A DNA stretch of 64,000 nt from Amphiscolops sp. MND2022 (taxonomy: Eukaryota). Both the position numbers and the translations under genes were made by a program. The stretch's first letter is position 1, and each line of letters begins with the position of its first letter. This document shows, one piece after another, positions 2,940-33,870 of this stretch. The stretch is from the NCBI GenBank assembly GCA_964187785.1, contig OZ076411.1, positions 66,588,001 through 66,652,000 on the forward strand, in the 5' to 3' direction. The notes beneath the pieces are model-generated. The model worked only from the letters and a program-made list of their open reading frames with translations, was not told where the DNA came from and made no database searches.

Positions 2940-3472
2940 AGCATGATAATCCACCGTTTGGTAGAGTTAGCGAAAAACAAGTGAAAGCGGCAAATTTTAG
3001 GTCGTTGTCAGGGTGAGAATGGCTGGAAACAGTTGTCGGTTGAGCTTTTTCTTTGCTTTGGCTGCGGCTGGAGTGCATACGACGATGACTAGGATTGCTG
3101 TGTAGCGTAAACGTGCGGGATTTCCTGAAATGTGTACTTCGAGTTGCTGTTTATGGTGTCTGCTAGTTTGGCGAAGTTGTCAGGTGGCAGGTACAAATGT
3201 GCGGTAATTGAGGAACGCGTTGAGATAGGCAAGGCTTGCATAAGGTTTTCTGGAATTGCCTCGAGGTTGTGGTGATATTTGGTGGTGTCATGTCCTTGGC
3301 AATTCCAGATGAATTGGGACTCCAATTGTCGAAACCAAACAGTTGGGTTTGTCCGGTAGAATGGAGGTGGCTTCATTGTGACTCTGTTGACAGGTGCGTG
3401 TTGTAGTTTTTGGTGAAATGATGTTGAATTTGTAGTGTTGTCTCCGGATCCAACTTCGATGCTGTTCGGCAT
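2940..3472 (-). pseudogene. gag: gag of copy 3 (5' portion of element only)
   Basis: KPPPFYRTNPTVWFRQLESQF motif and a degenerate CX2HX9CX3C knuckle start (ICRFHLFFANSTKRW). Homology stops near 2940. Confidence 0.85.
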
Positions 3473-14613: not shown

Positions 14614-15889
14614 TGAGAAAACCCTCATCAGTTCAGTTCCACAGGACCAAAAAATAATCAATGAGGTTCTTGTATTTCTAACTAATTCTATGAAAGAACA
14701 AGTTTTGTAAAATAGTATCTTTAACTCAAGTGTAGTATAAGGCTTTTTCAACCATAAAACACACCAGTTCTATATCGAATGTTTATGTTTGGAAACACTA
14801 GGTATGTCTGCAATCGAAACTCGTAGAGGTTAAATGTTTTTGATTGACGGATGAACCGTATAACATTCCCCCTTCTCTCTCCGGGGTTCTTCTAGACGCT
14901 GGATGAGGGGCCGGGTTGCATTGTGTTGTCCGGCAGAAAGTCTTGTGGCTTTTGTACACGTCCTGGTAGTGGTTGAGGTGTACTTTTTGTTCGGCTCCAT
15001 GGTTGGCCTGTAACATAAACTTGTTGGCCTGTCATATCCAAAAATTTCCTCTGTAAGGTATACTACCGTACCTATTCGGTTTGTTAGTATCTCGGTTTGA
15101 CCGTCTATTTTTATTTTCAGAATTCTCACCCTGAGGCATTTCTCCATCTGTATGTATTTGTATTACGTCGTTTTCGGGATCTGTCGTATCGGCGCATACC
15201 GTCTATCTCTGTGCGATGTGTCGTATGTTTTCCCGACTTCTTCCGTCATTTCTTCTTCATCATCATCCTCGTCGACTTCGTCTTCCGTCTCAGGCTCGGA
15301 TTGTTTTTTGTTTTGTACTATTTGCAGTTTTCTATTTAGGATGTCCCTCAGGATTTCATCCCATTTCCCGTATTTGCCGTTGAGTCCTCGTAGGCAACGT
15401 CAGTTTTTTGTGTAATTTCGGAAGAAACTGTAGGTGCCGACTCTTTTCGGTGTCTCCTCTCGTTCTGAAATAATGGGCAATAATATTTCAGTGTATACTT
15501 TTCCCCGTATCTGTTTATACGGTGTTCTCAGTTCCGCTTATTGCGGTTTGTATTTTTGATTGAAATCTTCCTTCTAAAGGTTTTCGGTGGTGTCTTTTTT
15601 CTACAAATTTAAATGGATACTTAACCGGGTGCTTTTCTTTGTTGATTTTGAATCCGAAGCCAATTGCCGTTCTTCGGTTTTTGTTCGGGCCATCACAATG
15701 TGATTGGTGATTTCCCCGTTAGCGTCTCGTCCGACATATATCGGTATCTTGGGTCGACTTGGAGCTAAAATAGACTATTCTGACCAATCTGACAGAAAAT
15801 TTTTCATTTTATTAGTTAGTTCCGTTCTCGTTTTTCTACCGTGATGTAATTCAACTGCTGTTTTTAGTCCCGTGTGTATTGTGAATCGC
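14614..15889 (-). mobile_element. Gypsy element, 3' half (integrase C-terminus, PPT 14866-14881, probable 3' LTR 14614-14865), separated from its 5' half by the 16.85-kb insertion
   Basis: The minus strand from 15887 reads RFTIHTGLKTAVELHHGRKTRTELTN, continuing the integrase broken at 32744. PPT gagagagaagggggaa precedes tgttatacgg. The LTR left edge is tentative. Confidence 0.8.
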
Positions 15890-15911
15890 CATTACAGTGC
15901 CAAAAGTGGGT
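15890..15911 (+). repeat. Left TIR
   Basis: cattacagtgccaaaagtgggt, exact reverse complement of 32720-32741. Confidence 0.95.
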
Positions 15912-15949
15912 AATTTGAATTTTTGCAGCGGATTTCTCTGGACGGCAGT

Positions 15950-16240
15950 TTTGGAAAGCGTGCAGCGTAATCCACTAACAAATGCTATTACGTTGCAGTC
16001 GATTCCACTCTTTTGGCGATTTTTCTGCAGCGAATTACGCTGCAAAGCATTAGATTCCACTATCAAATACCTTAAACATTCGGATCTCGCAGTGGATTCC
16101 AATAAACACTGCCGTGGATTCCACTGAACGCTGCAGTGGACTCCACCGATGGCCGCAGTGGACTCCGCCGATTTCCGCAGAGGAATCCACTATCGGCTGC
16201 AGTGGACTCCACTGCAGTGTTTTGGTGGAATTCAGTGAAT
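15950..16240. repeat. Left subterminal array of GTGGA(A/T/C)TCCAC palindromes
   Basis: About 8 copies, for example ccgtggattccactg, gcagtggactccaccg and gcagtggactccactgcag. Confidence 0.9.
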
Positions 16241-17014
16241 TGTTTCACTGAATTATTTCATTGAATTATTTCAATACCAACCTACAAAAACTATCAACCA
16301 TCGAAAAAAAAGTGGAGTTCATGTAGTTCCGTGCCTGAAAGTTCTTCCTTCACGAGTTCAGTTTTGAGAATGAGAAATTTTTTCAGAATCAGCAGGTGTC
16401 ACAAAAAGAAGGATTCAGAATTTCGTCATTCGGCAAACCATTCCCAGTGAGTTTTTACCGCAATCAAGCACCGTTTTAACGCTTTTGTTTAACTGTTATT
16501 TTTTCATACATTGATTGAATCATAGTGGGCATCAAAATTTCACACACAATTCATGCTAGTTACCTAGATATACACACATACCTTTAGGTATAACTAGCTT
16601 TTATTTTTCATTTACCTCATGGTGAATACTAAAGTTTGGTTCCGGAAAACTCACTTTAGGCATACTGCTGACTGCAACGGAGACCTTATCAATTCTACAT
16701 CAAATTTCACACACACCTCTTTCGTGTATTTTAGGTACAACTAGTTTCCACTTTTCAAGTACCTCAGGGCGGAATCCAAAATTTCAAATTGAAATACAAG
16801 CCGAAAGATGAATGGAAATCTAAATTCAGGTGAAGAAGACGTTGCAAGGGAAAATGTTATTCACGGTGTTTTGTTTCGATATTACGAAAAACAAATATTT
16901 GTACTTGTAGCAATCAGTGTTACAAAATGCAAGTGAAATTAAAACGAAAGTAGTGAAAAATCGAATACACAACAACGGAAAGTGTTTTGTAAACGGAGTT
17001 TTCTGACGATTCCA

Positions 17015-17948
17015 TCAGTCAAATATCGGTTGAGAATCTTCCTGGAAAAGTTGATTGGCAATGGGGTCATTGTAATCAAAACGGAGCTGCTCAAATGGTA
17101 GAATATCACGTGTAGCTCGGAACACTACAATCGTTTTGCCATTTTGGAACAATTCGATCACTGTGGGCTTCATGTTGGCGCCGTTTGATTTCAACTGCGA
17201 GTGGTTGGCAAGGCGAACAGGGCAGCGAATATTTGTGTGAAGGGGGCAAACTCTTTGGAGGCATCAATAATTCTTCTAGAGGCGCCTCTTTTAACCTCCA
17301 GAACGAACTCTTGCTCCACACCTTCTTTCTCGAGGACTTGGCTCAATGACATGTTCAAATACACCTCGCCATGGTAATCCATTAAAATGTCGTCCTTTGA
17401 AAATTTCTGTATGGCAATCACACATCTCCCAAATTTTGACATTTTGGCTAAACAGATTCCAGGCCACAGCTGCGTCTCACATCGCTGCGACAACCAAATT
17501 TTTCTTCATATGGCAAATTATGAGCAAATCGAGCATACCGAATTCCACTGCTCCCAGGTACCTGCGAGGATTTCCTATTTGACTGGTTGTTAGAGAGAAT
17601 CAATATCTGCGCTGTCATATTTTTCACGTCCTGGTTCGTATCCTCCAGCGAAGTCCACTTTTGTCGCTGAAAAAATGCCGCCACTCTTGACTCAAAATAG
17701 TTAATAGCAACTTTCGCAGAAACTTGTTCAAAGTAGAGCAAGGACCTGGCTGACTGGCGAGTGTACCTTTGCTGGTCTTGGCGGGCGCAAACAGCGTTTC
17801 TCACATCGTCTTTGTCGAAACCTTCAACATTCGAAAGAACCAAATTCATTGCATGTTTCAGCTTGGCGATTTTGAAGCATGGGTCATTGGAAAGGGGCAT
17901 CAGTTCCGCGACTTTACCTTTCAATATATATTGATCTTTTGCGGTCAT
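17015..17948 (-). CDS. SET-domain lysine methyltransferase (SETD8/PR-Set7-like signature), about 310 aa after two single-base frame corrections
   Basis: KFGRCVIAIQKFSKDDILMDYHG...IIDAS...RLANHS...VVFRATRDILPFEQLRFDYND. The frameshifts sit in short homopolymers (17499-17503 and 17248-17250). No introns seen. Confidence 0.88.
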
Positions 17949-19220
17949 TCAGCGTAAGTTAGTCAAGACGGTCTATGCTTCAACGGTGTAGCTGTGTCTA
18001 CGCGCGTAATGGAAAATAGTGTAAACTAGTCAAAGCACGTAGTTAGTGAAAAGTGGAAGTTAGTCCAAAAATTCTCGTTTTCGTAATTCAGTCAAAACTT
18101 TGACTAACTTCCACTTTTTGCAAATTGCAGATCGCTATACTTGCAATAAGTGGAAGTTAGTCGAAGTTTTGACTAACTTACACCATGTTTATATGCATTC
18201 AACACTCAGTGTTCATTTCAATTCCAATTCATACCACAGCATCGTAAACCAGTCAAAGTAAACAATGATTCGATAAATAATTAGTTATCATTACTAAGCT
18301 CTACCGTGCATAGTAGGTATAAACTGCATTCAATGCAAGTTGCACACGTGAACACGTGTGTTTCATCCACGCATTTACGTGCAAATAAAATACCTTGCAG
18401 CTTCTAATTAGTACAATTATAACAATTGATTGATCTGTCAACGGGTTTCCTATTTCAAGAAAATATATTTTCAAAGCAGCCTTCATTAATAGTTGCCTAA
18501 CTAAATTTAATTTTGGTCCCTGTCGTGAGCACGGTCACCGGAATGATTGGATAACTTGTTATTTTGGTCCGGGTATTTTGAGCCAGGGTATTGACAAGGA
18601 TCTATTTAAATCCCTGTCGTGAGCAACATCAAGAAAAGTTGTAACAAATAATCTATACAAAGTTGACACTTTATCAAACCGAAAACAGTAGTTTATGGAA
18701 TACCGATCTTGAATTATTGAACTAAAAACGAAGTTTGGACCATGTGCCTTATCCTCCCTCAGATAAATACTGTTTCTTATCCAACAACATCCCCCCCGTC
18801 CAAGTCTTCCCAAAGAAATGAAAGTAGGTCTCATAAAGAAGGGGCGATTGTTTCATTGAACTTGGTAATTTTGGTCCCTGTCGTGAGCACTTCCATTAGT
18901 AGTCAGATTGACTGTTTATGCGATTTGATACTGTGTATGCGATTCAAGCAGTGTAGTTATGAGTCGGCGTGTGTAGCTCACCAGTAACAACCCGTAATTA
19001 CCAGAAATATGTGTAAATATGAGATGCACAGTGTAGTTAGTCAAATTGCTTAAACTAGTCAATTGGTGTAAACTAGTCAATTACTGTACTATCCAATGGT
19101 GTAAACTAGTCAACGTTCGAAGCTGTGTCAACTAGTGTAACGTCCTATCAATGCGCACAATGTGTGACAAGTGTAAAACTTCAAAAAAAATATTCGCGCT
19201 CTGATTGGACAAAAATTGAA

Positions 19221-20079
19221 CTAGCAGGATCCTGCTAGTTCGTTACCGGGATGTGTATCGTAATGGTGAACTGTTAGTTCCGATGATCCAATTGTGTGTT
19301 CCACACAGAGATTGAAGGCGTCGCTCAGTGAATCTTCTTCGTGATCCATCACGATTTGCACAACTGAGTGTACCGAGACTTTCCGGATGGAATTTTCAAG
19401 CGTAGCTGGTACCGCATAATTGAACAGGGTTGTAGTTATGCATCAAAAGAGTTCCAACTTAGCTTTTTGTACTAGTCCCACATTTTCTTTCGATGCCTGC
19501 ACATGTTTAGCCAACGTTCTTTTGTACATGTTGTTGTCAAAGTAAGTAACTTTCGCACATATCCTCACTGCACTGGGAGTCAAATGGACGCTTCTCGGGT
19601 GGCTCATTGAGCTGGGGTGACACATTGGTCCCGGGCACATTGCTCTGGGGTGGCAAGTTCTGGTGAGGCAGTGAATTCTGTGACGGGGGGTCCTGTTGTA
19701 GTGGGTTCTCAGGCGGCAAAGGAATATGAGTCAGATTGTGAGCATTCTGCAGTAAATGTTCTAGAGCTTCTGTGGGCGTATGTTCAATCAAGTGCTCGAT
19801 CCCATCGGAGTTCATCATTCTAGTTGCACTGAAGAAACCTTCCTCGGGGGCCGATGGAATTGGCGAATAAGCTGGCGGACAAAACATGGATGCATTACTC
19901 AGGAAATCAGGCGGCACATTCCAGTCGGTAGATAGTCGATGTGACTGTTGCACAGGTGTAGAAGTCTGGGATGGACACAAGCGTGTTGATTCGAGATTTG
20001 AAATTTTGTCAGGCATGCTAGAATTATTCATGAACCTAGGAGCACAAATTTTGACAGCGGATTCCGCTGAATGAATCAA
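19221..20079 (-). pseudogene. Cargo ORF of unknown function (Pro/Gln/Ser-rich N-half)
   Basis: ORFs 19537-20079 and 19443-19640 overlap, and the latter frame continues past a TGA to a TAG at 19221-19223 (CITTTLFNYAVPATLENSIRKVSVHSVVQIVMDH...). No domain recognised. Confidence 0.45.
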
Positions 20080-20477
20080 AATTATGATGTAAAAAGAAAT
20101 GACAATTTTGTAATTAATTTTTTTGATAAAGCGTCGTTTTCCTGATTAGCAGAGACTCGATTTCACCTATTGCACTTCACAGTGACAAAATTAATAATTT
20201 CAACCAGTAAGTGTTATCAAGTTTATTACGGTGGTTGAGTCCTTCCGGGACTCAAATGCCTGTTCAAATATATTAACACTCACGAGATGAGTTTAAAAAC
20301 TAAATGCTAGTAATATTTTCCTTTTATTGATCACTCAAAATGGAATGAAACCTTCTTTTAGGATCATCACCGTAAAATTAGCCTCTTTTTCGCGCAGTTT
20401 TTGTGTTGACACCTGGTAATCACTTTGCACAAACTTGAACAGTTTGTGCTCAAAGGAAGCTCAAGTGTTTCTTTCTG

Positions 20478-21727
20478 TTGAAGTCAACTTTAAACTCCAC
20501 TACAATGCTTCTGCAAACTTTTAAAATATATGAAATAGTCCAAATCCTCGACCCTGAAACCTATATTCGGGAGTCTGCAAAAATAATAGCGTTCATAAGT
20601 GATTGGTCTCTGAAAATCCAATGGATCGACTGGAACAATCGTCTGCAGAAAATTGAAATTCCCCTCGAATTGCGTCTTGACCCAAACAGGTGGAACATTA
20701 GAAAAGCACGACATTCGCAACCAGTCAGGTCGAAAAAGCGTTCTTAACCCCTGTCGTATAACCCAAACCGACTGCAAAAAACGAGCCTGTGACATTCTGG
20801 CTACCCCATGGTGAGTGTGAGGGGCATTGATTTATTGATTCCCATGGAAAATTCAAAACGGGAACTATTTCGACGAATGACCCATCTACCCATGAGTGTG
20901 TCGTGTTTACATTTATCCCCTATTGCTATTTGAAGAACTCTCAGTGGAAGACACCCATGTTCACGATGAGAAAGCAGAAGACGACGAGGAAGCTGAAGAG
21001 ACGAGGCAGCAACATCGGGAAGAACCAAAACAGAAAAGACCTAAAACACAAATACCAGAAATAGACTTTTCAACATTGATACCGCAAACCGATGTTGATG
21101 TCAAATTAAGCTATGTACCTCGTGTCAATGGTATTTGTCGAAAAGGATCCATTATTACTTTGTCTGGAATAGAGTTCAAAGTGGAGGATTTGTACTACAG
21201 TGCACAGAAGTTGAAACAATTTGCAATAATGGTATCCATGGACGACGAAGACTGCGAACTTAGGATGCCAGTAAACAATTGTTCGTTAAAGACCTCGGAC
21301 TATTTAAAAAAACGTGGAAATCAAAATTTTCGCTCTTGATAATGATGTTGATAGAACGTTTGCAGTCTTTTCTGCAAATAAGAGATGTGTTGGTTTGTCG
21401 TTCAAGAAATCATCAACTGTGACAAACATGATACCTGCAACAGAGCTCACAAAACGTGTCTGTGGGTTCAAGTCGGACTCAAGCAGAGAAAACGTGAAAA
21501 TTTCAATAGAAGTTGAAACGGGAAACTTGGGAGGCTACAACAGCTTAGATTTTATATTGGGCCAGAACTGGGACATCATACCAGATACGCTTGAAGATGA
21601 GCCTGCAACATTGATCAAGACATTGAAATTGACGGAACATCGCGACTTTATGATGTTCTCACTCAGGTGCCACATAACTACAACTGAAGGCCACTACAAA
21701 AAATGGAGACTATCGACAAAGCTTTAG
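20478..21727 (+). pseudogene. Cargo ORF with an N-terminal Tudor/chromo-barrel-like domain and an acidic/basic linker, frameshifted
   Basis: FKIYEIVQILDPETYIRESAKIIAFISDWSLKIQWIDW resembles a Royal-family barrel. ORFs 20478-20747, 20896-21339 and 21314-21727 are collinear, and the last two join by removing one A from the A7 run near 21306-21312. Confidence 0.5.
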
Positions 21728-22125
21728 GCAAAACATTCAACATGCTTATTGAATACTTTGTTGACCAATAGGGGTAGCAATTTTGGTATCCACCGTGAGT
21801 AAATGTGCAAATACATCTTCAAAAAACGTCTGTTTTGTTACCCTAAACAAACTGAATGGTATTTTTGTTGGTATTGCACTGATAAAGTTCTTTTTCTTAA
21901 TTCGATTGTTACAGTAATATTGTCCTTGTTACAATAAATGATGTCAAAAAACTTCTTTCATTTGCGACTACTTTCTTGAAAAACTCTCCGCAGAAGATAA
22001 TTTCAAATTATTAATCAGAACTGCTCCCGATATGTAATAATGCTTTGTTACTTTGGTTTTTGCACATGCAAATTTTTGGTACAAACGTTCTACTAAACCT
22101 ACTAAATGCATCTAGCCAGAAACAG

Positions 22126-22400
22126 TAAGTGGATTTCACTAACGTATACCACTACATTGACAGTGGATTCCACAAACAATTTCTTAAACGTTTGCAAACC
22201 AATCCAAAAGGGGTACATTCAGTTAATTATTAGTTCTAAATAGACTCAAGTTTCTATTGTAGTGGATTCCACTATTCTGGAAAAAATTCTTCATCCTGCA
22301 AAAAGCGATATGCGGAATCGACAGACGTATTTCAATACACTAAAAGTGAGTTCCACAAACAAATGCTCGAACATTTGCAAACCAATATAAAAGAGTAAAT
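22126..22400. repeat. Internal repeat with GTGGATTCCAC motifs; inverted, rearranged partner at about 26400-26660
   Basis: The reverse complement of about 22150-22260 matches about 26408-26530, and that of about 22255-22320 matches about 26530-26600. Confidence 0.85.
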
Positions 22401-22792
22401 TCTAATCTAAATTCTGTTCAATTCTAAACTAAAGAGTTTGATAAAAAACAATAAACTATAAAAGTTTGCTCAGGCAGCTTGTTTGTTCACCATAGTGAAT
22501 TTTTCTCGAGGCTTTTTTTTGCAATGTAGGCTCGTTGCGAAGGCCAGATGGTAGAGAGCAATTTTCTTGCTCAAAAATATTTCGAAAGTGTCGCGGCTTG
22601 CAATGAGAGGCGGCAGGGTGTCTAAACAGATCATAATGATGGGATTTGTGATTTTTTTTCAACAGAGTCAATTTCAAGGTTTTCCGATAGACTAGTGGTC
22701 AAATATCTATGTAAAGTTTAACATCAAGACTTTGAAAACTATGACATCCACAATTGCGGCTCCTAACCTATATCGAAGACGTCCTTCTCTTT

Positions 22793-25351
22793 TTAAAGGA
22801 TGCTACGGTCACGTGTGCTGGTATTCTGCATTGCTTCGGGGATTTCGGCCTGGTGCAATGGTCCAATTCGCACTTCTTTGACAGTCCCTGTGAAGGCGTA
22901 GACTGACCATTTTGGGTCGCGATAGGGCTTCTCCGGACCCCTGAATCCCAGTTGAGTTAAGTTGAAAGCTGGATACACCTGGTAACAAAAGGCACTGACA
23001 ATGATGAATAGAGCGAATTCAATGAGAAATGTGCAAAATTACAATTACGTTTGAAGAAAATACGTTTAAATTGTTAGGCAGTTAGAAACGAGAACCATTA
23101 AAATCCGTAGTTCACAACCCAGTCCGTGGAAGAGATTAGTTTTTTTTCTACATTATCAGTTACCATTCATAATCAACAAACATTGATTACCATTTTGATG
23201 GCGTCGAGCTCACTGCTGATCTGCTCTTTCAGAAGAGTCAGTTGTGGGCTGGAGAAGAGGGGGCTCCATGATCCTCTCAGGGAATTGAGTTTCCGCTGGA
23301 GTTGTCGTATTTTAAACTGTAGCACAGCATAAACACGAACAACTCCGGGAAAAACCTCTTCGTCGTCTATTTCCTGCTGACTGGCGTTGAGGTGACTGTC
23401 CACAATTAGAGGGAATTGTGTGACAGCGAGGAAGTTGGAGGCAAAAGCAATGGCGTCTCCCTTTGTTGCCACTATATGTGGCCAGCGTGCAGGCACAACG
23501 AGGATGAAGACTAAATAAAAACAAAATAGTATACATTTAAACGAAACAACTGGTTCAATGACTTTGAATCATGTGCATGATTGATAATGTGCTCTTCGCA
23601 AAATGATGATCTGAGTACAAGTATGTACATGATCAGAGTACATTTACCTTTTTGTGGGGATATTGCTCCACTCCTCAAAGAGCTGCAAGTTTGATCTTGT
23701 CGGCTCCACCAGCCAGAAGATATTCTGCCCTCGAGCGACAGTATAAAAGGCAGTCGTGCTTGGAAAATCGACTTGCCACGGTGTGAGACACTGATCATTT
23801 GAGACCAGCAAATATTTTGAAGTAGCCTCAGTCAAGTGCACTGCTACATCCACACACTCATCTGCAAGTTGGTCAACCGCACAGTAACGGACAAAGTCTG
23901 GTACTTGGAAAAACTAAACGAAAACGACAAGACATCAGCAACCGGTTTCAGAACAAAGACTCCCTACAGTGGTCGCCATTTTCAACATCCAATTAGTTGC
24001 TAAAAATTTGAACAAAAGAAGGGTGCATCATGTATTTCACTGACTTTTGGCACTGTAAAGACACCAAATTCAAACAGATATTTTTTCCAATGAGAGCCCT
24101 TCCAAGATATGATAAAAAAAACTTACATTCTGTTCGAGTGCAATGTCAACGACATTGACAGGAATTGTCCCCGTGGGTGCTGCTGAGGGCCCCGCTCGCT
24201 GCTCGTCCAGGTACTCGCTCACTGTTAAAGACCTGACCTAAAATTCGAAAAAAAATATTTCAAGCATACTCCTTTGAAATTACTTTACCAATGTTTAGAT
24301 AAGTTACAGTGAAATCCACTGCCAACGATGACTTAGTGGATACTAAATCTCAATATGTTTTGATTCAACGTATACAATAATTTTTATCACTATTGGTAAA
24401 ACGCTAAACTTGAATGAATTTTGTGAAGTTCGAAAAATACAAAGATTGGCGGGATATGTTCACCTGTTGGTCATGTGGCAGCCGTGATGACTTTGCAGCA
24501 AGCTTTGCTGCAGGATTAGCCAAGTGCTGCAGCAAGAACTCCACTTGGTGGACGAAGTCCTCAGCGGGCAAAACTGGGAGCTTCAAACCTCGCGAGTTCA
24601 AAGCCCCGTTCTTCCACAATATCGGCTGGCCACGAGAGAGTGCTTTCAGGACCATGCCGTTTTCGTCTTCTTGCTGATTTTCCCACCTGCAGCAGTTCTA
24701 GGGCTCCTCTGAAAGCGGCATGTCCTCTAAGTTCTTTACGAAAAGACTTGATCCTTCGTACGCCCGTCGACTAGGCTCGCTCGACATTGCCATGTCGCTT
24801 TCTTTGTGGAGGGGAAATCGTTCCAGGTGTCTCTGTAGGGAGTCACTCCGGACAAATTTCTCACCACAGTATGTGCAAGGATATTTTTTGCTGGGGTTGT
24901 CAGTTTCTAGAAAAATTTATTGAATAGAATTTAAACTAATAACCTTGTTCGCACATTTTGACTATACTTATGTTCGTATTATGTTCGTATTATGTTCGTA
25001 TTTATTTGTATCTAAATCCTAAACTGTCACACTAAGAATAAATATATGTTTGAGGCTTTCTGGTTTGTATTCACGTCTTTGTGATAAAAGTTTTACACAG
25101 TTTTTTCAAGAAAAAAGTGGTAGGGGGAACGAAAAGAGCCGCAAATCGTTGACATAGTTGATCTACTTACTATACTTTCTTTCATTTTGGGGTATGTCTG
25201 TTGTGCAGTACCTCGCTTTCTCGATGTTCCGCTTGAGCGTTACAAGGGTGGCGAAGACCCTCTTGCAACGGGGACAGGCTTTGTTTTGCGGCTGCTTTGT
25301 ACCGCGGCGGCGGTTCGACTTGTACGAACAGTTGGGGCAGCTGTATTCAGT
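22793..25351 (-). pseudogene. Spliced C2H2 zinc finger plus JmjC (KDM7/PHF8-KDM2-like) gene with an ELM2-like C-terminal motif; one in-frame TAG
   Basis: GT-AG exons 25351-25171, 24906-24464, 24237-24127, 23913-23648, (uncertain mini-exon about 23610-23550), 23510-23191 and 22978-22793. Motifs: YPCTYCGEKFVRSDSLQRHLERFPLH; QPILWKNGALNSRGLKLP; SKYLLVSNDQCLTPWQVDFPSTTAFYTVARGQNIFWLVEPTRSNLQLFEEWS; VVPARWPHIVATKGDAIAFASNFL; VRIGPLHQAEIPE. The stop is at 24698-24700 and the start exon was not found. Confidence 0.85.
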
Positions 25352-25621
25352 CTGTAGAAGCAAAACAACATTATAGTTTATCCTCGAAGCGTCTTACATG
25401 TAAACGCCAAATATTCGAACCGCTAAGAGATATTACAACCTCCCATTTCAAATAAAGACCTGTTTTTCCAATCAGTAAAAGGAGGAAACGAACAAGCAAA
25501 AAAACAGAACATGCCAAAATTGCTAAACCACAAATGAATTTAGAACTCCACCATTTTAAAATGGAGATAAATATCTCGGTTGTTTAACAATATGAATAAA
25601 TAAAAACAAACAAATAACAAA

Positions 25622-25700
25622 GCGCTATGGCCGAGTGGTAAGCAACTAAACTATGAAGCCATAGATCGTGGACTCGAATCTCTATCGTGTCGATCCTATG
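25622..25700 (+). repeat. tRNA-derived (SINE-like) head
   Basis: gcgctatggccgagtggtaag (A-box) and gactcgaatctc (B-box-like), without a complete acceptor stem. Confidence 0.55.
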
Positions 25701-26790
25701 TTATCTCAGAAAAACTGAGTTTACCTAATTTTTCAATTAATATGTAAAAACTTTGATCTTGCTATCGCGAAATTTAGTTTGATTGTCTATGTTAACAAAA
25801 ACTTTTAATCTTTTCTTCATATCGTATCATTGCTTTCTGATTTCATCTGCCAACAGTTGAGTATCAAAAAGAAATGGTCTTTGACATGAGTATTGCATTG
25901 CTTTCCCTTAAAACGAGATAGATCGAAATCGGGTCTTTTCTGTTATTCCCTCCACTCTATTCTTTAAAAATTACCCCCAATATTTCTTTTGTCAGGATAA
26001 GAATCGAGGTATTTGACTCACTCCCTAATGATTCACTTCTCAATGATGAACACCTACCAACATTTCAAAAATTAGGACAAGAATTGTTGTATAGGACTGA
26101 CTTCATATTGATTCGCTTCTTAGTGAATTGAGTGGGATGGGAGTAAATTTGCTGGGAGGGGGGGGCTTTTAAAAGAAAAGACCCACGAAATCGATAACAA
26201 TTTTTTACTCAACGATTTCTCTGCAAATAGTGATCAGTTTTTCACTCAGGCCTGTTCAAAGAAGATGGCAGTTCAAACTCAGATTTGTTTTTACTACTCG
26301 GGAAAACCAAAAATTTCGTATGAAAATTCAAGAGCAGTTTTGCTGACAGTGTGTACATTTTCTTGCTAACTCAGGTTTTTCCACTACTCACAATAGATAC
26401 AAAAAATACAAATAGAAACTTGAGTCTATTTAGAACTAATAATTCACTGAATGTACCCCTTTTGAATTGGTTTGCAAATGTTTAAGCATTTGTTTGTGGA
26501 ATCCACTGTCAATGTATAGGTATATGTTAGTCAATTCCGCATATCGCTTTTCGCAGGAAGAAAAACACTTTCCAGAATAGTGGAATCCACTGCAATAAAG
26601 TCTATTTAGAACTAATGCTTTACTGATTGTACCCCTTTTAAATTGGTTTAAAATGTTTAAGATTTCTTGTCTAAGTTTCCGAGAAAAAAATGTTCAAAAG
26701 GTAAATTAGTACCACAAGCAAAGATTAAAACATATGTCTTCGAAATCATTTATTGTAACAAGCATTTGCAGAAATCAGAGTAGAAATCGA

Positions 26791-29700
26791 TCATCTGCTG
26801 GAGTTTTGTTGCTTGACTAGGCCGTTTCGGTATCTTTTCAAGGCCACAATGGCTGACGTGTTCGCTATTGATTTGTTATCATCTATTTGATCCATCAAGA
26901 GTCGTCGCATGTCAATAATTTTCATCGGGTTGATCAAGAGTCCAGGCCTTATAATATAATTTTCAGGGTCCAGTATGACGTTACTTTTCATCATTTCGAG
27001 TACGTATTCAACAGTGATGAACATGAGACCCGCCGAGGCAAATCTTTTGCAGGCCAAAGCTGCAGGAGACAACTTCTTTTTTGTTGAACACTTTTCATCT
27101 TCTCTGCTTTCGGCGTCTGTTGACAACTCGCTTGCGGTACAATGTCTATGGAGCTTCAGTTTTCTTCTCATGGCTTCCAATTGATGTTTATCGCCATTCG
27201 CGTTTATTAGGTCCTCTTCGTTTTTGACAATAACGTAAAAATTCAAGATATTTGAATGGGATTTCATTATGTTCTCCGCGTTTTCTTTCTCATAAACGAC
27301 ACCTCCCATTTCGGAAATTCTATCTTTGAGGAAATCCTGTGTGAGCCCACGCTTGAAGCTACCTACAATTGTAAATCTCAATCCTCGTAGAAGGTCGCAA
27401 AATTCTCTCTTTTCGCCAACGGCAAGGCAGGGTAGCGCCAAGGGAGTTCTGCAAATGTCTAGATAGGTTTTGGCACCCTCTAAAGTCTTTTCAGTCGTGA
27501 GTGTTTTTCTAACATGTTCAATTACATTGTATTTTTTTCGAAACTTGTTGAAGAAAAATCCAGGAACCGGCAAAACGAAAATGCAGTATCAAGAAATAAT
27601 GGATCTTGATGGTAAGTGGAGCCACCGCCTCTTATGGTTCGGGATTGAAAATTTCTGTTCGCATTGTGGTTCGATTTTTCCAAGCCTTCCCAGAGGTGAT
27701 TCCATGGCTTCTCGATGTGTCCGCTCTCCACTATTTGGGCTATCAATGGAAGCTTGAGCTTGTATGGTGACAGCCCCTTTCGCCCGAAGAGGAGCAAATT
27801 GATTTGAAAGTATGTTTCAGCCCATCGTTTGTAAGTGTCGACATCAAATGTTCCCTGAGTTCTCAACAGAATAGCACACTGGTTTAAACTTTGTCGTAGA
27901 AGCTCACAAGCGTCATAAATTGATATATATCTTTCTTCGTTTCATATCATTCTCAGTGCAACGCGTTATCATGTGTGTAGCGTCTGGCAGATTGTTCTGA
28001 CATCGATTATGCTTGCTAATGCTTCTCTAGGAACATGTTGTCCGAATGGGATCTTCGAAGATGTTCGTCTTCCATCAACATCTGAGCAGCGGGTGGGGAG
28101 GAAATTTTCATCGCATACATATATCGGAAGTTGTGACGCTTGGGAACTTGAACGTTCAGTTGAAGTTCCCAGGACCAAACGCGTCAAGAACGGGCTGTCA
28201 CCACTGTATGTAATTTCAACGCCCAACGCTTGTAGTTCTTTTGTCTGGCGGTATAGCCATCCAGATTCTTGCTTACCCAGGATAGACGGGCCAAAGTTTT
28301 GTTCCATTGCATATCGGCGATTTTTGTGCCACGATATGATGCAAAACAGAAGACAGCTTTCGATGATTGGCTGCTAACTGTGGTGTTCAAAATTCTGAAT
28401 GCTAGACACGTTACCTCAACCCCCCTATTTCGCAACCGTCACCCCAAACATCAATTGTAAGGCCTACAAGATTGGTTTTTTGCAGTAAAACTAATGACGC
28501 AAACGTCACTGCTTTCAGTAAACTGACTCGAAATCCAGAATAGGTTCGCTCAGGCTCGCAAATTGTAACAAACAATTTCATTATGAGGCGAGTAGCTCTT
28601 TTGATGTGACGAATTGACGGTACTAGGCTGCCACCTCCTAAACCAACCGGAACTAGCCTTTGTCGAATTGCATTGAGGATATATTCCATGTTGCTAGTTT
28701 TCATTTTGATTGAAAGTTCGTACCTAAAGCACTCGGGGGAGCCCCTGTCCTCCAAAAGACCCGTGAACAAGTCTCGAATGTGATTACCGCTTGCGCTTCT
28801 TTTTCGCCACGTGCTACGTTTCTGATGCTGTTCTTTGAGAATTGTGGCTATGGGTAATCCGTGAATAGGTAAACCATGCACTCTAGCAAAATTCAGGACT
28901 TTGGTCCAAAAAGTTTTCTTATTAGTTCTGTGCCACCTTTTGGGTTGTAATTGCGTAATATTCATATCTGATCGTTGCTGGTCTTTGGAATTATTAACTT
29001 CTGATGTCATCTGTAGCACTGCCTTTTCTTGGAATGTTACTTCAAGGGGTGTTTCTCCAACCATCTCATGTTGAGAAGAAAATTTATCATTTGTAAAAGT
29101 ACCGACATCGGGGCAAAATCTGGTGTTGGAATATTTTGAAACGAATTTTCTTCTTTTCTCGTTTCAAGGTAGTTCTTTATAGCCCCGCAGAAATAAAAGT
29201 TTCAATCCAGGAACCGGCAAAACGAAAATGCAGTATCAAGAAATAATGGATCTTGATGGTAAGTGGAGTCACCGCCTCTTATGGTTCGGGATTGAAAATT
29301 TCTGTTCGCATTGTGGTTCGATTTTTCCAAGCCTTCCCAGAGGTGATTCCATGGCTTCTCGATGTGTCCGCTCTCCACTAGTTGGGCTATCAATGGAAGC
29401 TTGAGCTTGTATGGTGACAGCCCCTTTCGCCCGAAGAGGAGCAAATTGATTTGAAAGTATGTTTCAGCCCATCGTTTGTAAGTGTCGACATCAAATGTTC
29501 CCTGAGTTCTCAACAGAATAGCACACTGGTTTAAACTTTGTCGTAGAAGCTCACAAGCGTCATAAATTGATATATATCTTTCTTCGTTTCATATCATTCT
29601 CAGTGCAACGCGTTATCATGTGTGTAGCGTCTGGCAGATTGTTCTGACATCGAATATGCTTGCTAATGCTTCTCTAGGAACATGTTGTCCGAATGGGATC

Positions 29701-31520
29701 TTCGAAGATGTTCGTCTTCCATCGACATCTGAGCAGCGGGTGGGGAGGAAATTTTCATCGCATACATATATCGGAAGTTGTGACGCTTGGGAACTTGAAC
29801 GTTCAGTTGAAGTTCCCAGGACCAAACGCGTCAAGAACGGGCTGTCACCGCTGTATGTAATTTCAACGCCCAACGCTTGTAGTTCTTTTGTCTGGCGGTA
29901 TAGCCATCCAGATTCTTGCTTACCCAGGATAGACGGGCCAAAGTTTTGTTCCGTTGCATATCGGCGATTTTTGTGCCACGATATGATGCAAAACAGAAGA
30001 CAGCTTTCGATGATTGGCTGCTAACTGTGGTGTTCAAAATTCTGAATGCTAGACACGTTACCTCAACCCCCCTATTTCGCAACCGTCACCCCAAACATCA
30101 ATTGTAAGGCCTACAAGATTGGTTTTTTGCAGTAAAACTAATGACGCAAACGTCACTGCTTTCAGTAAACTGACTCGAAATCCAGAATAGGTTCGCTCAG
30201 GCTCGCAAATTGTAACAAACAATTTCATTATGAGGCGAGTAGCTCTTTTGATGTGACGAATTGACGGTACTAGGCTGCCACCTCCTAAACCAACCGGAAC
30301 TAGCCTTTGTCGAATTGCATTGAGGATATCTTCCATGTTGCTAGTTTTCATTTTGATTGAAAGTTCGTACCTAAAGCACTCGGGGGAGCCCCTGTCCTCC
30401 AAAAGACCCGTGAACAAGTCTCGAATGTGATTACCGCTTGCGCTTCTTTTTCGCCACGTGCTACGTTTCTGATGCTGTTCTTTGAGAATTGTGGCTATGG
30501 GTAATCCGTGAATAGGTAAACCATGCACTCTAGCAAAATTCAGGACTTTGGTCCAAAAAGTTTTCTTATTAGTTCTGTGCCACCTTTTGGGTTGTAATTG
30601 CGTAATATTCATATCTGATCGTTGCTGGTCTTTGGAATTATTAACTTCTGATGTCATCTGTAGCACTGCCTCTTCTTGGAATGTTACTTCAAGGGGTGTT
30701 TCTCCAACCATCTCATGTTGAGAAGAAAATTTATCATTTGTAAAAGTACCGACATCGGGGAAAAATCTGGTGTTGGAATATTTTGAAACGAATTTTCTTC
30801 TTTTCTCGTTTCAAGGTAGTCCTTTATAGCCCCGCAGAAATAAAAGTTTCATTATTTTCGATGCAACAAAAACAGATCCCTGGGGCTGCCCTTTAATTGG
30901 TAGGTTTTGAATAAGATCGTCTATCTTCAGAGTCGTCCCTACGACCATTTCAGCAACGATTGAAGTAAGTTTCCGTTGACGATTTTGTAACGTGTTTCCT
31001 GATATAAAGTCTAGTATTTTGGAATCTATGAATTCTTTCCCATCATCCAGTGATAGATTGAACTTTTCGAATTCTGACATTTCTGAACTTTTAGACAAAG
31101 AAATTGAGCGTGTCAATGGTGTATCAAATCGTCGATAATGATGAAGCCGAAAAATTATCAAAATCCATTTCTTTGTGTTTCAGTTTCCCTCCTTTTGCGT
31201 CTTCTGATACGCCGTGTTTTTGCCTCAACTTCAAATAAATTTATTCTTGCAACATTTTTTTCACGGTATTACCGTACGCTGTTTAAATATTTCTTCAACA
31301 CCTGTTTGAAACTATTTCATTGCACGCGTTGAACTAAAACTACAAGGTCATACGTGCGATCACTAGTAGGTGATAAAATTAGGTGCAATTGTTCCCAAAA
31401 AATCATGTGGAAGGATTTTTCAGTGATGTTTTTTCTCCACCGTGAGTTGGTTGACATTGTATAGAAGATTTGCCAGCGAATGATTCTGTTGTTTTTCGAA
31501 CGTGAGTTGACCGTGAACAC
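26791..31520 (-). CDS. Divergent RAG1/Transib/Chapaev-like DDE transposase with C-terminal BRCT domain (about 1000 aa reconstructed with the duplication removed; several frameshifts)
   Basis: Ordered motifs LTIDVWGDG (D at 28438-40), TYSGDSPFL (D at 28197-99), PDATHMITRCTE, GLSPYKLKL and WEGLEKSNHNANRNF (E about 27678-80). BRCT about 26950-27400: LRGLRFTIVGSF...LKDRISEMGGVV...ITVEYVLEMMKSNVILDPENY. The N-terminal start is approximate. Confidence 0.75.
27558..30851. repeat. Near-identical tandem duplication, 2 x 1647 bp (27558-29204 and 29205-30851), covering the transposase catalytic core
   Basis: All ORFs recur at +1647 (27866 to 29513; 28411 to 30058; 29064 to 30711) with only scattered substitutions. 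Confidence 0.95.
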
Positions 31521-32289
31521 ATTTCAAGCACTACAACTTCTTGACCAAAAATGGTGAAAAAATTTTTTTTCAATTGAAGAAACTACACTTTATCATGACA
31601 AAAAGAAAGACGTAAACAAAACTTTTAACAAAATTTTTATAATAAGGAGAGAATTTTAGAATAATAGAGAAGAGAGGAACGCATCAGGTGTGAGTTGTAA
31701 CCATTGAAGTTGTAAACATTGCAACCATAAAGAGTGATTTTGAAGTTCCCACCATTCGCCGATTGCTTCACAGAATTTGTATGATTTTGACCTGAAACAA
31801 ACAAAAAAGAAAAAAATCTGGAACTTTTTCCTTTTCCCTACACTTTTCAAGATGTTGTTTTTGCAATTACAGTAGACTTCGGATAATGGAATATCGGCTA
31901 AATATCGAAATCAAAACTTCGGGTAAACGAAAAAAAATCCTCGGCAGTATAGATCATAGTAGCATGTTTTCGTTTTATCGAATATTTCACTGAATCGAAA
32001 ATTTTTCGCCGTTCCTGCATAATTTGAGCCGAACCTAAGTAAGTGCTGTATTGCGAGATAACTTCATCAACACAGGTATATTTGTAATCCTCCGTGATAG
32101 AGTGTTTTATCGAAAACATCAAAAGCTGTTAGAAGTAGCAAAGACTGAATTTATTTATCTAATAATAATAAATTAATAATAATAATAATTTTATATAATT
32201 TTCTATAACAGGTGTGGACGGTCAAAACAAAAGGGCCAAATGTTTTGTTTCAGCATGAAAAATTGCAAGAAGATTATTTCAAAGTTATT

Positions 32290-32700
32290 AATTATGTTTC
32301 ATTGATCTGTCCTTTCGAAGAAACTTGGAGTGGATTCCACTTCAGCTTACAGTGAATTGAACTTTGGCTCACAGTCAATTCCACTCGTTTTGCAGTCAAT
32401 TCCACAAGTTGAAAAGTGGAATCGACTGTAGGCCAAAGTGGAATCGACTGTAAGCCAAAGTGGAATCCACTGTAATCTGAAGTGGAATCCACTGCAAGTT
32501 TCAGCAAATTTCGCTGAAAGTTGAAATAAGCTGACGCGCTTGGTTCAGTCAGTTGGCAGTGAAAAGCAGTGGATTTCGGTGCACACATTTTTGTACATTA
32601 GCTAGATATGTTAGTGGAATCCAAAACAGGCTACCGCGGAACCCAATGAAAATCAGTGAAATACATGTTTAAATGTATGTCAGTGGATTTCGGTGACTTA
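32290..32700. repeat. Right subterminal array of GTGGAATCCAC-type palindromes
   Basis: About 10 copies (gagtggattccactt, gtggaatcgact twice, gtggaatccact twice, and others). Confidence 0.9.
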
Positions 32701-32719
32701 ATAGCAGAAAAGTGTGTTA

Positions 32720-32741
32720 ACCCACTTTTGGCACTGTAATG
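32720..32741 (-). repeat. Right TIR
   Basis: acccacttttggcactgtaatg. Confidence 0.95.
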
Positions 32742-33870
32742 GCATTACTTTTAGTGCTGGGTTTACGCTTTCGGTTGAGTTATTACCGTCTTCCATATTA
32801 GCTAAGACTAAGTTTTTCATTGTTTGTACTGCTCTTTCAACTGATCCTTTTCCGGTATGCATTCGGGGGGTGGGCAATACAGGATTTCTATATTTTGGGC
32901 ATTTACAATATTCTTTGTATTCAGTCGAAATGAATGCCCCCTTTATAAGATTCAATTTTTTCTGGAATACCGTATTATTTAAACTGATTTGATAAGAAAC
33001 TTATGACTTTTCCGGTAAAATCTATTTGTAATTCTTGTCCGGGTTCGGATAGTTTCCCTAATATTCCGTATTGCTTTTTGGAATTTGATATTTAAGGTTC
33101 TTACCTGTGGCTGAGCAGGCCGTGCAGTCCTATACTTTCTGTTCAATGTCCTTCCGCATTTCCGACCACCAGAAGATCTTTGCCTCGGATAGCATTTTGG
33201 TTGTCCCAGAGTGAGCGAAATGTAGAATTTCATTTAATTTTTTTCGTCGATGGGGACGCCACTATGATCGTCTACAAAGACTGAACCCCACCGAATTGAA
33301 AGCTTGTCGAAGACCGCTCTATATCCTTCCGGAGCGGTATCTCTTTCTTCTCTCCTCATGCTGGCTCTTACTTGTGTCATTTCCGGATCAATAGCCGTTT
33401 TTGAGGTAAGAATTTTCAAGTCTAGCATGAAGTTGAATTCCGCTTTCTTTATGTTCTCCTCCGTTATCTTTTTGTTTTCGATGAGGTTTCCCACTATGTG
33501 GATTATTTGGATATAGTGAGCTTCCTTGCCTTCTGTGTGATATTTGCTGAGATCGACGATCGGCAGATTATCGCCCCGCATTATCACGCTGTCTTCTTCG
33601 GTGTCTACCGTATTTTGTTCAGTGTGTGATTCTCCTTCTTCCGGTGTTTCCGGTTCTTCCTCTTCTTCGTCTTGTATTGGGCTGTATCCCCCGCCTATCC
33701 GGTTTGCTCTTTGTGTGAGCTCGGCGTCTATTTCCGCAATTTCTTCCAGGTTTCTTTTGTTTGGTCATGACGGGGCAAAAATTGACCTTTGTGATTGCGA
33801 ATCGTATCGTCTCCGCATTGTTCCGGGTCTTGCTAGAGCTTCTCTCGTTGTCTGATATCTTTTCGAAACA
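32742..33870 (-). mobile_element. pol: Gypsy pol fragment (RNase H-integrase linker, HHCC, integrase core), the 5' half of the interrupted element
   Basis: TAIDPEMTQVRASM...FDKLSIRWGSVFVDD; LHFAHSGTTKMLSEAKIFWW...DCTAC; GAFISTEY; GKGSVERAVQTMKNL...SVNPALKVM ending at the TIR. Confidence 0.88.

What the first reader, a model, noticed from the sequence alone, without database searches (positions are those of the whole stretch)
15860..32770. Empty-site reconstruction: the element splits a Gypsy integrase and leaves a 2-bp (GC) or zero TSD
Seen: on the minus strand the right flank ends aaagtaatgc and the left flank resumes gcgattcaca. Removing 15890-32741 plus one gc gives ALKVMRFTIHTGLKTAVELHHGRKTRTELTN in one frame, so the whole 16.85 kb appears to have inserted as a unit. 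The junction reads equally well as CA...TG termini with a 2-bp TSD or CC...GG termini with none. Known: Transib makes 5-bp and Chapaev 4-bp TSDs, while 2-bp TSDs are typical of animal EnSpm and Mirage. The TSD therefore does not fit the transposase's closest motif relatives.
Basis: seen in the sequence. Interest (0 to 1): 0.8.

Follow-up and report, generated by a model that had tools for sequence, protein, structure and literature searches.

The report
Giant transposon leaves two-base footprint
A 16.85-kb jumping gene landed as one piece inside the integrase gene of an older retroelement and duplicated exactly two bases (GC), which is normal for the wider RAG1/CACTA-like transposon clade its cutting enzyme belongs to.

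Summary
Window 15890-32741 is one DNA transposon with perfect 22-nt inverted ends starting CATTAC. It is flanked by GC on both sides. Removing it plus one GC restores an integrase reading frame.

Fourteen of 16 uninterrupted copies of the same retroelement family carry a single GC at that spot (gtgaatcGCattac, ALKVMRFTIHTGLK). There is no TA and there are no extra bases.

Genome-wide the end sequence occurs about 440 times. The two bases outside CATTAC vary, and 15 of 18 left/right pairs share them (GC, CC, GA, GT, AC, TC, AT, TT, GG). The third base never matches. So the ends are CA..TG with a true 2-bp duplication, and the CC..GG zero-duplication reading is wrong.

Four sister copies of 15-19 kb have the same gene order and different duplications, so the unit moves whole.

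The transposase has no sequence match in Pfam or the PDB. Its predicted fold matches RAG1, ProtoRAG and Transib (Z 17-19). A plant CACTA cluster is also among the structural neighbours listed, so fold alone does not choose between Transib and CACTA. The 2-bp duplication, near-CACTA ends, subterminal repeats and size look EnSpm/Mirage-like.

Published range for this clade is 2-5 bp, so the footprint is not anomalous. Other agents of this scan noted the family elsewhere in this genome.

The parts
15700..15889 (-). Host retroelement, integrase C-terminal region downstream of the insertion (RFTIHTGLKTAVELHHGRK...WSE stop)
   Evidence: Frame restored. Collinear with uninterrupted copies L032-L050. 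The family has Integrase_H2C2 + rve and zf-CCHC + aspartyl protease + RVT_1 upstream.
15888..15889 (.). Left copy of the 2-bp target-site duplication (GC)
   Evidence: Single GC in uninterrupted copies. The flanking dinucleotide varies between copies but matches within pairs.
15890..15911 (+). Left terminal inverted repeat, 22 nt, CATTACAGTGCCAAAAGTGGGT
   Evidence: (I8). Contigs of other copies diverge exactly at the first TIR base of a short copy (loose ends before 1503 of L005).
15998..16212 (.). Left subterminal repeats: palindromic GTGGAWTCCAC, mostly at 22-bp spacing (6 copies)
   Evidence: D2, D3; 18 copies in the element against 0.18 expected, 6 in the first 700 bp and 6 in the last 700 bp.
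17015..20079 (-). SET-domain cargo gene, split in this copy by a private 1.3-kb insert at 17942-19265
Evidence: SET domain E 5e-8 and 5e-9, above Pfam's cut-off, in the uninterrupted sister ORFs L055:1976-3769:- and L057:2241-4280:+. Insert boundaries from the copy comparison.
22115..22402 (.). Array of about 183-bp repeats, inverted partner of 26411-26668
   Evidence: I1, I2, I5, D4. Repeat number varies between sister copies.
22793..25351 (-).
   Evidence: The sister-copy ORF L055:7422-7847:- hits the JmjC tail at E 2e-4, below Pfam's cut-off. L055:8727-9236:- hits zf-C2H2 at E 8e-4.
24039..24060 (-). Internal TIR-like pseudo-end (18 of 22 identical to the terminal repeat, starts CT not CA), oriented like the right end
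   Evidence: D8. Conserved at the equivalent position in all five full-length copies.
26411..26668 (.). Second array of about 183-bp repeats, inverted relative to 22115-22402
26791..31161 (-). Transposase gene (RAG1/Transib-fold DDE core plus a C-terminal BRCT-like region), broken in this copy. It has a 1647-bp tandem duplication (27944-29590 / 29591-31237), and 374 bp are missing at 27943/27944 and again at 29590/29591.
   Evidence: ORFs. Duplication (D1). An uninterrupted 804-aa frame exists in L071:1363-3774:-. Fold. BRCT_2 E 4.8e-5, below Pfam's cut-off.
32330..32624 (.). Right subterminal repeats (GTGGAWTCCAC, 6 copies)
32720..32741 (-). Right terminal inverted repeat, 22 nt, perfect complement of the left one
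   Evidence: I8.
32742..32743 (.). Right copy of the 2-bp target-site duplication (GC)
32744..32955 (-). Host retroelement, integrase region upstream of the insertion (...GSVERAVQTMKNL...NPALKVM)
   Evidence: The insertion lies about 40 aa after the rve core (L049 ORF: rve at aa 365-460, junction near aa 500).

Best explanation
Window 15890-32741 is one copy, now defective, of a large autonomous cut-and-paste DNA transposon family. Its DDE transposase has the RAG1/Transib fold. Its likely catalytic residues are D326 or D330, D410 and E705, numbered on the 764-aa protein from L071. By inference, the transposase binds the 22-nt CA..TG inverted ends and probably the GTGGAWTCCAC subterminal repeats. 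It excises the whole 15-19 kb unit and joins the two 3' ends to target phosphates staggered by 2 bp. Gap repair then duplicates those two bases. Here the target was the GC in gtgaatcGCattac, in the C-terminal part of the integrase of an old Ty3/Gypsy-type retroelement copy. Shown here: the boundaries, the 2-bp duplication, the empty site, movement as a unit, and the fold. Inferred: the chemistry, the role of the subterminal repeats, and the placement in the EnSpm-Mirage-Chapaev-Transib (CMCT) clade. Within that clade the anatomy is EnSpm/Mirage-like rather than canonical Transib. A finer assignment needs a phylogeny with reference transposases.
For: Boundaries and frame restoration. Empty site: in 14 of 16 uninterrupted retroelement copies the left and right flanks overlap by exactly 2 bp and read ...gtgaatcGCattac..., ALKVMRFTIHTGLK. 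Duplication: 15 of 18 left/right end pairs share their outer dinucleotide, with 9 different dinucleotides seen. In all 9 concordant pairs with longer flanks the third base differs. Unit mobility: sister copies of 16,689, 15,185, 18,931 and 17,344 bp are 90-95% identical, have the same order of parts, and carry duplications CC, AC, CC and TC. Transposase: AF2 model with pLDDT 79.8. The top 44 Foldseek PDB hits are all RAG1, HzTransib or BbRAGL. VIA-align gives Z 19.1 to RAG1 (378 residues aligned, 3.7 A), 17.4 to BbRAGL and 17.2 to HzTransib, against 12.1 for the P element and 8.7 for Hermes. A plant CACTA cluster (Transposase_21) aligns at TM 0.46 over 424 residues. Subterminal repeats: 18 copies against 0.18 expected. 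Literature: CMCT lineages share CA..TG ends and 2-5 bp duplications (PMC12730594).
Against: There is no sequence-level link to any named transposase family. Pfam and PDB searches were blank, even with a 28-sequence profile. The C(2)C and H(3-4)H motifs that define the CMCT clade are not conserved in this family. Between D410 and E705 only C480, H485 and H702 are conserved Cys or His columns. Language-model neighbours with a Pfam name carry RAG1_RNase_H and not Transposase_21, which leans towards Transib. Three of 18 end pairs disagree. Two of these have mutated ends and one is 27 kb apart and may not be a true pair. No transposition was observed, and the short copy tested shows no empty allele in reads.
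Confidence: 0.85

Rival explanations
1. The family is a true Transib-lineage element whose duplication has shrunk from 5 bp to 2 bp. This would parallel the Nozomi-related Transibs that make 3-bp or TA duplications.
For: All top PDB matches are RAG1, Transib or ProtoRAG. The nearest named language-model clusters carry RAG1_RNase_H (score 0.94, 172-174 shared features). bioRxiv 10.64898/2026.08.26.747230 reports variable duplications within Transib.
Against: No EnSpm, Mirage or Chapaev structure was among the PDB matches returned, so PDB hits cannot discriminate. A plant CACTA cluster is among the fold neighbours listed at TM 0.46. The RAG1 Pfam models do not hit the protein. The ends start CATTACA, which is close to CACTACA and not to the Transib/RSS heptamer (heptamer and CACTA ends recalled from memory). 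Large size, several genes and subterminal repeats are not typical of Transib.
Confidence: 0.2
2. The ends are CC..GG and the element makes no target-site duplication.
For: In this one copy the inverted repeat extends through the palindromic GC (I8).
Against: In other copies the two outer bases are GG, GA, CC, GT, TC, AC, AT or TT, while CATTAC is constant. They form direct, not inverted, repeats within a copy. Uninterrupted retroelement copies keep one GC.
Confidence: 0.01
3. The ends are CAGTG..CACTG with a TA duplication in a palindromic target gccatTAatggc.
Against: Sixteen uninterrupted copies show no such extra bases at the site. The TA model puts a stop in the frame. CATTA is constant at all ends genome-wide.
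Confidence: 0.01
4. The 16.85 kb is a composite built in place, for example two short elements bracketing unrelated DNA, and not one mobile unit.
For: Short non-autonomous copies of 127-705 bp with the same ends are common. This copy has private rearrangements.
Against: Four other loci on different chromosomes hold the same 15-19 kb order of parts between the same ends, each with its own matching 2-bp duplication.
Confidence: 0.03

Closest known systems
EnSpm/CACTA and Mirage (CMC group of DDE transposons)
   Same: CA..TG ends, with CATTACA one base away from CACTACA (En/Spm end recalled from memory). Short duplication within the published 2-4 bp CMC range (bioRxiv 10.64898/2026.08.26.747230). 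Arrays of subterminal repeats, size above 15 kb, several genes. A plant Transposase_21 cluster aligns structurally at TM 0.46 over 424 residues.
   Different: No Transposase_21 Pfam hit. No conserved C(2)C or H(3-4)H. The transposase carries a C-terminal BRCT-like region. The cargo is a SET-domain gene and a JmjC-like gene.
Transib transposase / RAG1 / ProtoRAG (BbRAG1L)
   Same: Best structural matches, Z 17-19 over about 380-400 residues covering RAG1 residues 479-1008. DDE order and approximate spacing agree. The nearest named language-model clusters carry RAG1_RNase_H.
   Different: Duplication of 2 bp, not the canonical 5 bp. The ends are not heptamer-like. No sequence-level hit to RAG1 models. 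The zinc-ligand columns are not conserved. The element is far larger and carries several genes.
Chapaev / Chapaev3
   Same: Animal elements distantly related to Transib (PMC4411706).
   Different: The hallmark N-terminal Chapa zinc finger, with or without a RING finger (PMC4411706), is not detected by Pfam in any of 28 family members.
Plavaka and other fungal CMCT elements carrying TET/JBP dioxygenase (PMC12730594)
   Same: CMCT-clade transposons with 2-3 bp duplications that carry an epigenetic-modifier gene as conserved cargo.
   Different: Fungal hosts, different ends (TGT..ACA or CATCA..TGATG), a DNA-demethylation cargo rather than histone-modifier cargo, and retained C(2)C / H(3-4)H motifs.

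Membership tests
CMCT clade (EnSpm-Mirage-Chapaev-Transib, as defined in PMC12730594) | 5'-CA..TG-3' termini | tested here: met
   The ends are CATTAC...GTAATG in this copy and in about 440 genomic hits.
CMCT clade (EnSpm-Mirage-Chapaev-Transib, as defined in PMC12730594) | Target-site duplication of 2 to 5 bp | tested here: met
   Exactly 2 bp: empty sites and 15 of 18 concordant end pairs, with the third base never shared.
CMCT clade (EnSpm-Mirage-Chapaev-Transib, as defined in PMC12730594) | [quoted passage not shown] | tested here: not met
   In the 28-sequence alignment, the only Cys or His columns conserved at 60% or more between D410 and E705 are C480, H485 and H702. This rests on sequence pattern only; no residue-level structural superposition was available.
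CMCT clade (EnSpm-Mirage-Chapaev-Transib, as defined in PMC12730594) | RAG1-type transposase fold (RNase H core with insertion and C-terminal domains) | tested here: met
   Z 19.1 to RAG1, 17.4 to BbRAGL and 17.2 to HzTransib. The top 44 Foldseek hits are all of this family.
Transib superfamily (canonical) | 5-bp target-site duplication | tested here: not met
   2 bp.
Transib superfamily (canonical) | Significant sequence similarity of the transposase core to Transib/RAG1 | tested here: not met
   No hit to Pfam RAG1 models or to RAG1/Transib chains in the PDB, with a single sequence or a profile, at E up to 10.
EnSpm/CACTA | Transposase_21 (Tnp2) type transposase | tested here: inconclusive
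   No Pfam hit, but a Transposase_21 cluster is a structural neighbour at TM 0.46.
EnSpm/CACTA | CACTA termini with subterminal repeat arrays | tested here: inconclusive
   The ends are CATTA, one mismatch from CACTA. Subterminal 11-mer repeats are present at both ends. The canonical end sequence is recalled from memory, not from a tool.
Chapaev | N-terminal Chapa zinc-finger domain, with or without a RING finger (PMC4411706) | tested here: inconclusive
   No zinc-finger or RAG1 N-terminal Pfam hit in 28 members. No dedicated Chapa model was available. N-terminal exons may be missing from the ORFs used.
Ty3/Gypsy LTR retrotransposon (host of the insertion) | gag zinc knuckle, then protease, RT and integrase in that order | tested here: met
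   zf-CCHC, aspartyl protease and RVT_1 in L051:5072-7228:+, followed by Integrase_H2C2 + rve in L049:2-2362:+. LTRs and an RNase H hit were not checked or found, so BEL/Pao is not formally excluded.

The most novel reading that the evidence does not exclude
The family represents a deep, so far unnamed branch of the RAG1/Transib-CACTA clade. On this reading it has lost the canonical CCHH zinc site, gained a BRCT domain, integrates with a 2-bp stagger, and carries histone-modifier genes as stable cargo. Because related families in this genome have uninterrupted 1017-1253-aa frames, an active enzyme may be obtainable. It could be compared directly with RAG and Transib (5-bp stagger) to find what sets the stagger.
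Probability: 0.3. Interest if true: 0.6.

Novelty: new variant of a known kind. Interest (0 to 1): 0.4.

Why it matters
The finding fixes the exact boundaries, ends and integration footprint of a large, abundant and so far unannotated transposon family. That is the basic information needed to annotate its roughly 440 ends and to classify it.

It also adds a case of a RAG1-fold enzyme that integrates with a 2-bp stagger. RAG and canonical Transib use 5 bp. Duplication length reflects the spacing of the two strand-transfer sites on the bent target DNA. A natural series of RAG1-fold enzymes with 2, 3, 4 and 5 bp staggers could therefore help explain how that geometry is set.

The footprint alone is not a surprise to a transposon specialist, because 2-5 bp is the published range for the clade.

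Tried and rejected
- **Sequence searches of the transposase:** all blank against Pfam and against PDB sequences, with a single ORF and with a 28-sequence profile.
- **Homologue searches:** 33-38 word-based hits and 368 representatives, none with a name or Pfam domain. They did not help classification.
- **Pfam RAG1 (PF12940) in this genome:** nothing found, but the control genomes gave nothing either, so this is uninformative.
- **Transposase_21 in this genome:** 19 weak hits at other loci. No in-genome EnSpm reference could therefore be compared.
- **Related element in another assembly (L073, via P0009):** only one TIR-like end (CATTGTTGCACCAAAAGTAGGT) was found, and that end is rare in this genome. 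No second-family duplication could be tabulated.
- **Reads laid on a 230-bp copy (L005):** this was meant to catch an empty allele. No joint skips the element. All four runs are from one sample and are held as contigs, so this says little about activity.
- **Target preference beyond the duplication:** none seen in 33 flanks. Positions 1-2 of that sample are biased by the search pattern.
- **Apparent end-to-end junctions in L020 and L027:** chance resemblance.
Full report
**1. The observation**

The plus strand reads ...tgtgaatcgc | CATTACAGTGCCAAAAGTGGGT... at 15889/15890. It reads ...ACCCACTTTTGGCACTGTAATG | gcattactttt... at 32741/32742. The two arms are 100% complementary over 24 nt (15888-15911 / 32720-32743, I8). 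The outer two bases are the palindrome GC.

Deleting 15890-32741 plus one GC gives a single open minus-strand frame:
...GSVERAVQTMKNLVLANMEDGNNSTESVNPALKVMRFTIHTGLKTAVELHHGRKTRTELTNKMKNFLSDWSE.

Keeping both GCs shifts the frame. The TA model introduces a stop.

**2. The empty site**

A 250-bp left-flank query found 40 scored matches, out of 1034 candidates, of the same repeat family in the genome at 81-90% identity.

- In the fetched loci, the last 120 nt of the left flank and the first 120 nt of the right flank map next to each other and overlap by exactly 2 bp.
- Fourteen of 16 uninterrupted copies read gtgaatcGCattac (or a close variant) with one GC. They translate to (A)LKVMRFTIHTGLK.
- The two exceptions carry point changes at the dinucleotide, not extra bases.

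There is no gccattaatggc, and both flanks belong to one family.

The family is a Ty3/Gypsy-type retroelement.

- One well-preserved copy has zf-CCHC, aspartyl protease and RVT_1 in one ORF.
- Downstream of that ORF it has Integrase_H2C2 and rve.
- The insertion lies about 40 residues after the rve core.
- LTRs were not examined, and BEL/Pao is not formally excluded.

**3. Termini and duplications at other insertions**

The 24-mer occurs 236 + 208 times at up to 3 mismatches, against 14 + 21 for the reversed control. In the listed hits CATTACAGTGCCAAAAGTGGGT is constant, while the two bases in front vary freely. They are therefore flank and not part of the inverted repeat.

I could pair 18 left and right ends.

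- Six short copies had both ends inside one locus.
- Five were full-length copies.
- Seven pairs were read directly.
- Fifteen of the 18 share the same dinucleotide as a direct repeat: GC three times, CC twice, GA twice, GT twice, TC twice, and AC, AT, TT and GG once each.
- The chance expectation per pair is 1 in 16.
- In all nine concordant pairs with longer flanks, the third base differs, so the duplication is exactly 2 bp.
- Of the three discordant pairs, two have mutated ends. One is 27 kb apart and may not be a true pair.

No target consensus beyond the duplication is visible in 33 flanks.

Contigs from public runs of the same organism diverge from a short copy exactly at the first C of the TIR. 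This independently marks the boundary.

The element therefore ends CA..TG and makes a 2-bp duplication. The CC..GG zero-duplication reading is rejected.

**4. One unit**

Four other loci hold the same architecture between the same ends.

| Contig | Length (bp) | Duplication |
|---|---|---|
| C1 | 16,689 | CC |
| C7 | 15,185 | AC |
| C10 | 18,931 | CC |
| C2 | 17,344 | TC |

They are 90-95% identical to the window copy. The comparison also shows that the window copy is defective in three ways.

- A private 1.3-kb insert (17942-19265) splits the SET gene.
- Inside the transposase gene, 374 bp present in all sisters are missing.
- A 1647-bp segment of the transposase gene is tandemly duplicated (27944-29590 / 29591-31237).

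**5. Anatomy**

- **Subterminal repeats.** The palindromic 11-mer GTGGAWTCCAC occurs 18 times in the element, against 0.18 expected. Six copies lie in the first 700 bp and six in the last 700 bp, mostly 22 bp apart.
- **Internal repeat arrays.** Two inverted arrays of about 183-bp repeats bracket the central 4 kb.
- **Cargo.** It is conserved in the sisters. One gene has a SET domain (E 5e-9, above Pfam's cut-off). A weaker C2H2 + JmjC-like gene scores below the cut-off.
- **Internal pseudo-end.** A sequence 18 of 22 identical to the TIR sits at the same internal position in all five copies.

**6. The transposase**

The window copy is broken, so I used an uninterrupted 804-aa frame from another copy (L071:1363-3774:-). 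A second frame follows it and carries a BRCT-like region.

The genome also holds related families at 54-57% identity. Their uninterrupted frames are 1017-1253 aa long, and many rows score identically.

Sequence methods find homologues: 368 representatives, all unnamed and without Pfam domains. They find no link to any named family, even with a 28-sequence profile.

The AlphaFold model has mean pLDDT 79.8. Its matches are as follows.

- Foldseek: the top 44 PDB hits are all RAG1, HzTransib or amphioxus BbRAGL.
- VIA-align: Z 19.1 to RAG1 (378 residues aligned, rmsd 3.7 A, model 271-756 on RAG1 496-1007).
- VIA-align: Z 17.4 to BbRAGL and Z 17.2 to HzTransib.
- For comparison: Z 12.1 for the P element, 8.7 for Hermes and about 5.5 for retroviral integrases.

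Conserved acidic columns D326/D330, D410 and E705 fit the DDE order. Equating them with RAG1 D600, D708 and E962 is my inference from range offsets and from RAG1 numbering recalled from memory.

The fold does not choose between Transib and CACTA.

- No EnSpm, Mirage or Chapaev structure was among the PDB matches returned.
- In the ESM Atlas, a plant cluster with Transposase_21 in 99% of members aligns at TM 0.46 over 424 residues.
- Language-model neighbours lean towards clusters carrying RAG1_RNase_H.

The clade's signature C(2)C and H(3-4)H motifs are not conserved here. This agrees with another first-reader note on this stretch.

**7. Comparison with what is known**

[quoted passage not shown] That paper states that they mostly share CA..TG ends and make 2 to 5 bp duplications. 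Plavaka families make 2 or 3 bp.
- A 2026 preprint (10.64898/2026.08.26.747230) gives 2-4 bp for CMC and 5 bp for canonical Transib. It also reports Transib-lineage elements with 3-bp and TA duplications, and concludes that duplication length is labile.
- Kapitonov and Koonin (PMC4411706) define Chapaev by an N-terminal Chapa zinc finger. Pfam detects nothing of that kind here.

It still lies inside the clade's known range. The near-CACTA ends, subterminal repeats, size and several genes all point to an EnSpm/Mirage-like element or a separate deep branch.

**8. Verdict**

It overstates the mismatch with relatives.

The footprint itself is ordinary for the clade. The family is a notable variant: a RAG1-fold enzyme without detectable sequence similarity to named families, without the usual zinc-ligand motifs, with a BRCT-like tail, and with histone-modifier cargo.

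Other agents of this scan reported the same family on other DNA of this genome (s1-151602, s1-307563, s1-178840). I re-tested the fold and the SET cargo independently.

Noticed in passing
G000 C13:39332888/39336411/39338557; C7:71071260/71076543/71078163; C9:18090144/18093467/18096609; L034:1629-1757 and 2994-3122: The integrase region of the host retroelement family recurs at 1.4-5 kb spacing on the same strand in several places. This suggests tandem arrays of partial copies and not dispersed full elements.
   Followed up: no
window 24039-24060 (equivalent positions in L052-L059 copies): An internal TIR-like sequence is conserved in all five full-length copies (CTTTACAGTGCCAAAAGTCAGT in the window, C1 and C2 copies; C7 and C10 read ...GTTAGT). 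It matches the terminal repeat at 18 of 22 positions, is oriented like the right end and lacks the terminal CA. It could be a relic of an older, shorter element or an internal transposase-binding site.
   Followed up: partly
window 22115-22402 and 26411-26668: Two inverted arrays of about 183-bp repeats bracket the JmjC-like segment. Repeat number differs between sister copies, and the repeats also contain the GTGGAWTCCAC motif.
   Followed up: partly
G000, e.g. C11:26497013-26498149, C12:15873108-15874244, C5:13485754-13486896, C2:32341490-32342632: Related transposase families at 54-57% identity have uninterrupted frames of 1017-1253 aa, and many rows score identically. This suggests recent or current activity.
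   Followed up: no
window 27944-31237: A 1647-bp tandem duplication sits inside the transposase gene, private to this copy. Each repeat unit shares the same 374-bp deletion, so the deletion came before the duplication.
   Followed up: yes
residues 1-100 of L071:1363-3654:-: The well-modelled N-terminal alpha/beta domain (pLDDT about 90) has only weak structural neighbours, which carry Bro-N domains (TM 0.12-0.14 by query). It may be a DNA-binding domain. It was not folded on its own.
   Followed up: no
L073:20762-20783 (ENA ERZ25074608 contig): Another assembly holds a 1119-aa homologue (51% identity). A related end, CATTGTTGCACCAAAAGTAGGT, lies 7.4 kb downstream of it. The second end was not found within 10 kb.
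   Followed up: partly
window 17942-19265: A 1.3-kb insert is private to the window copy, where sisters have about 217 bp. It is rich in short palindromes (18049-18181) and interrupts the SET-domain gene. Its nature was not determined.
   Followed up: no
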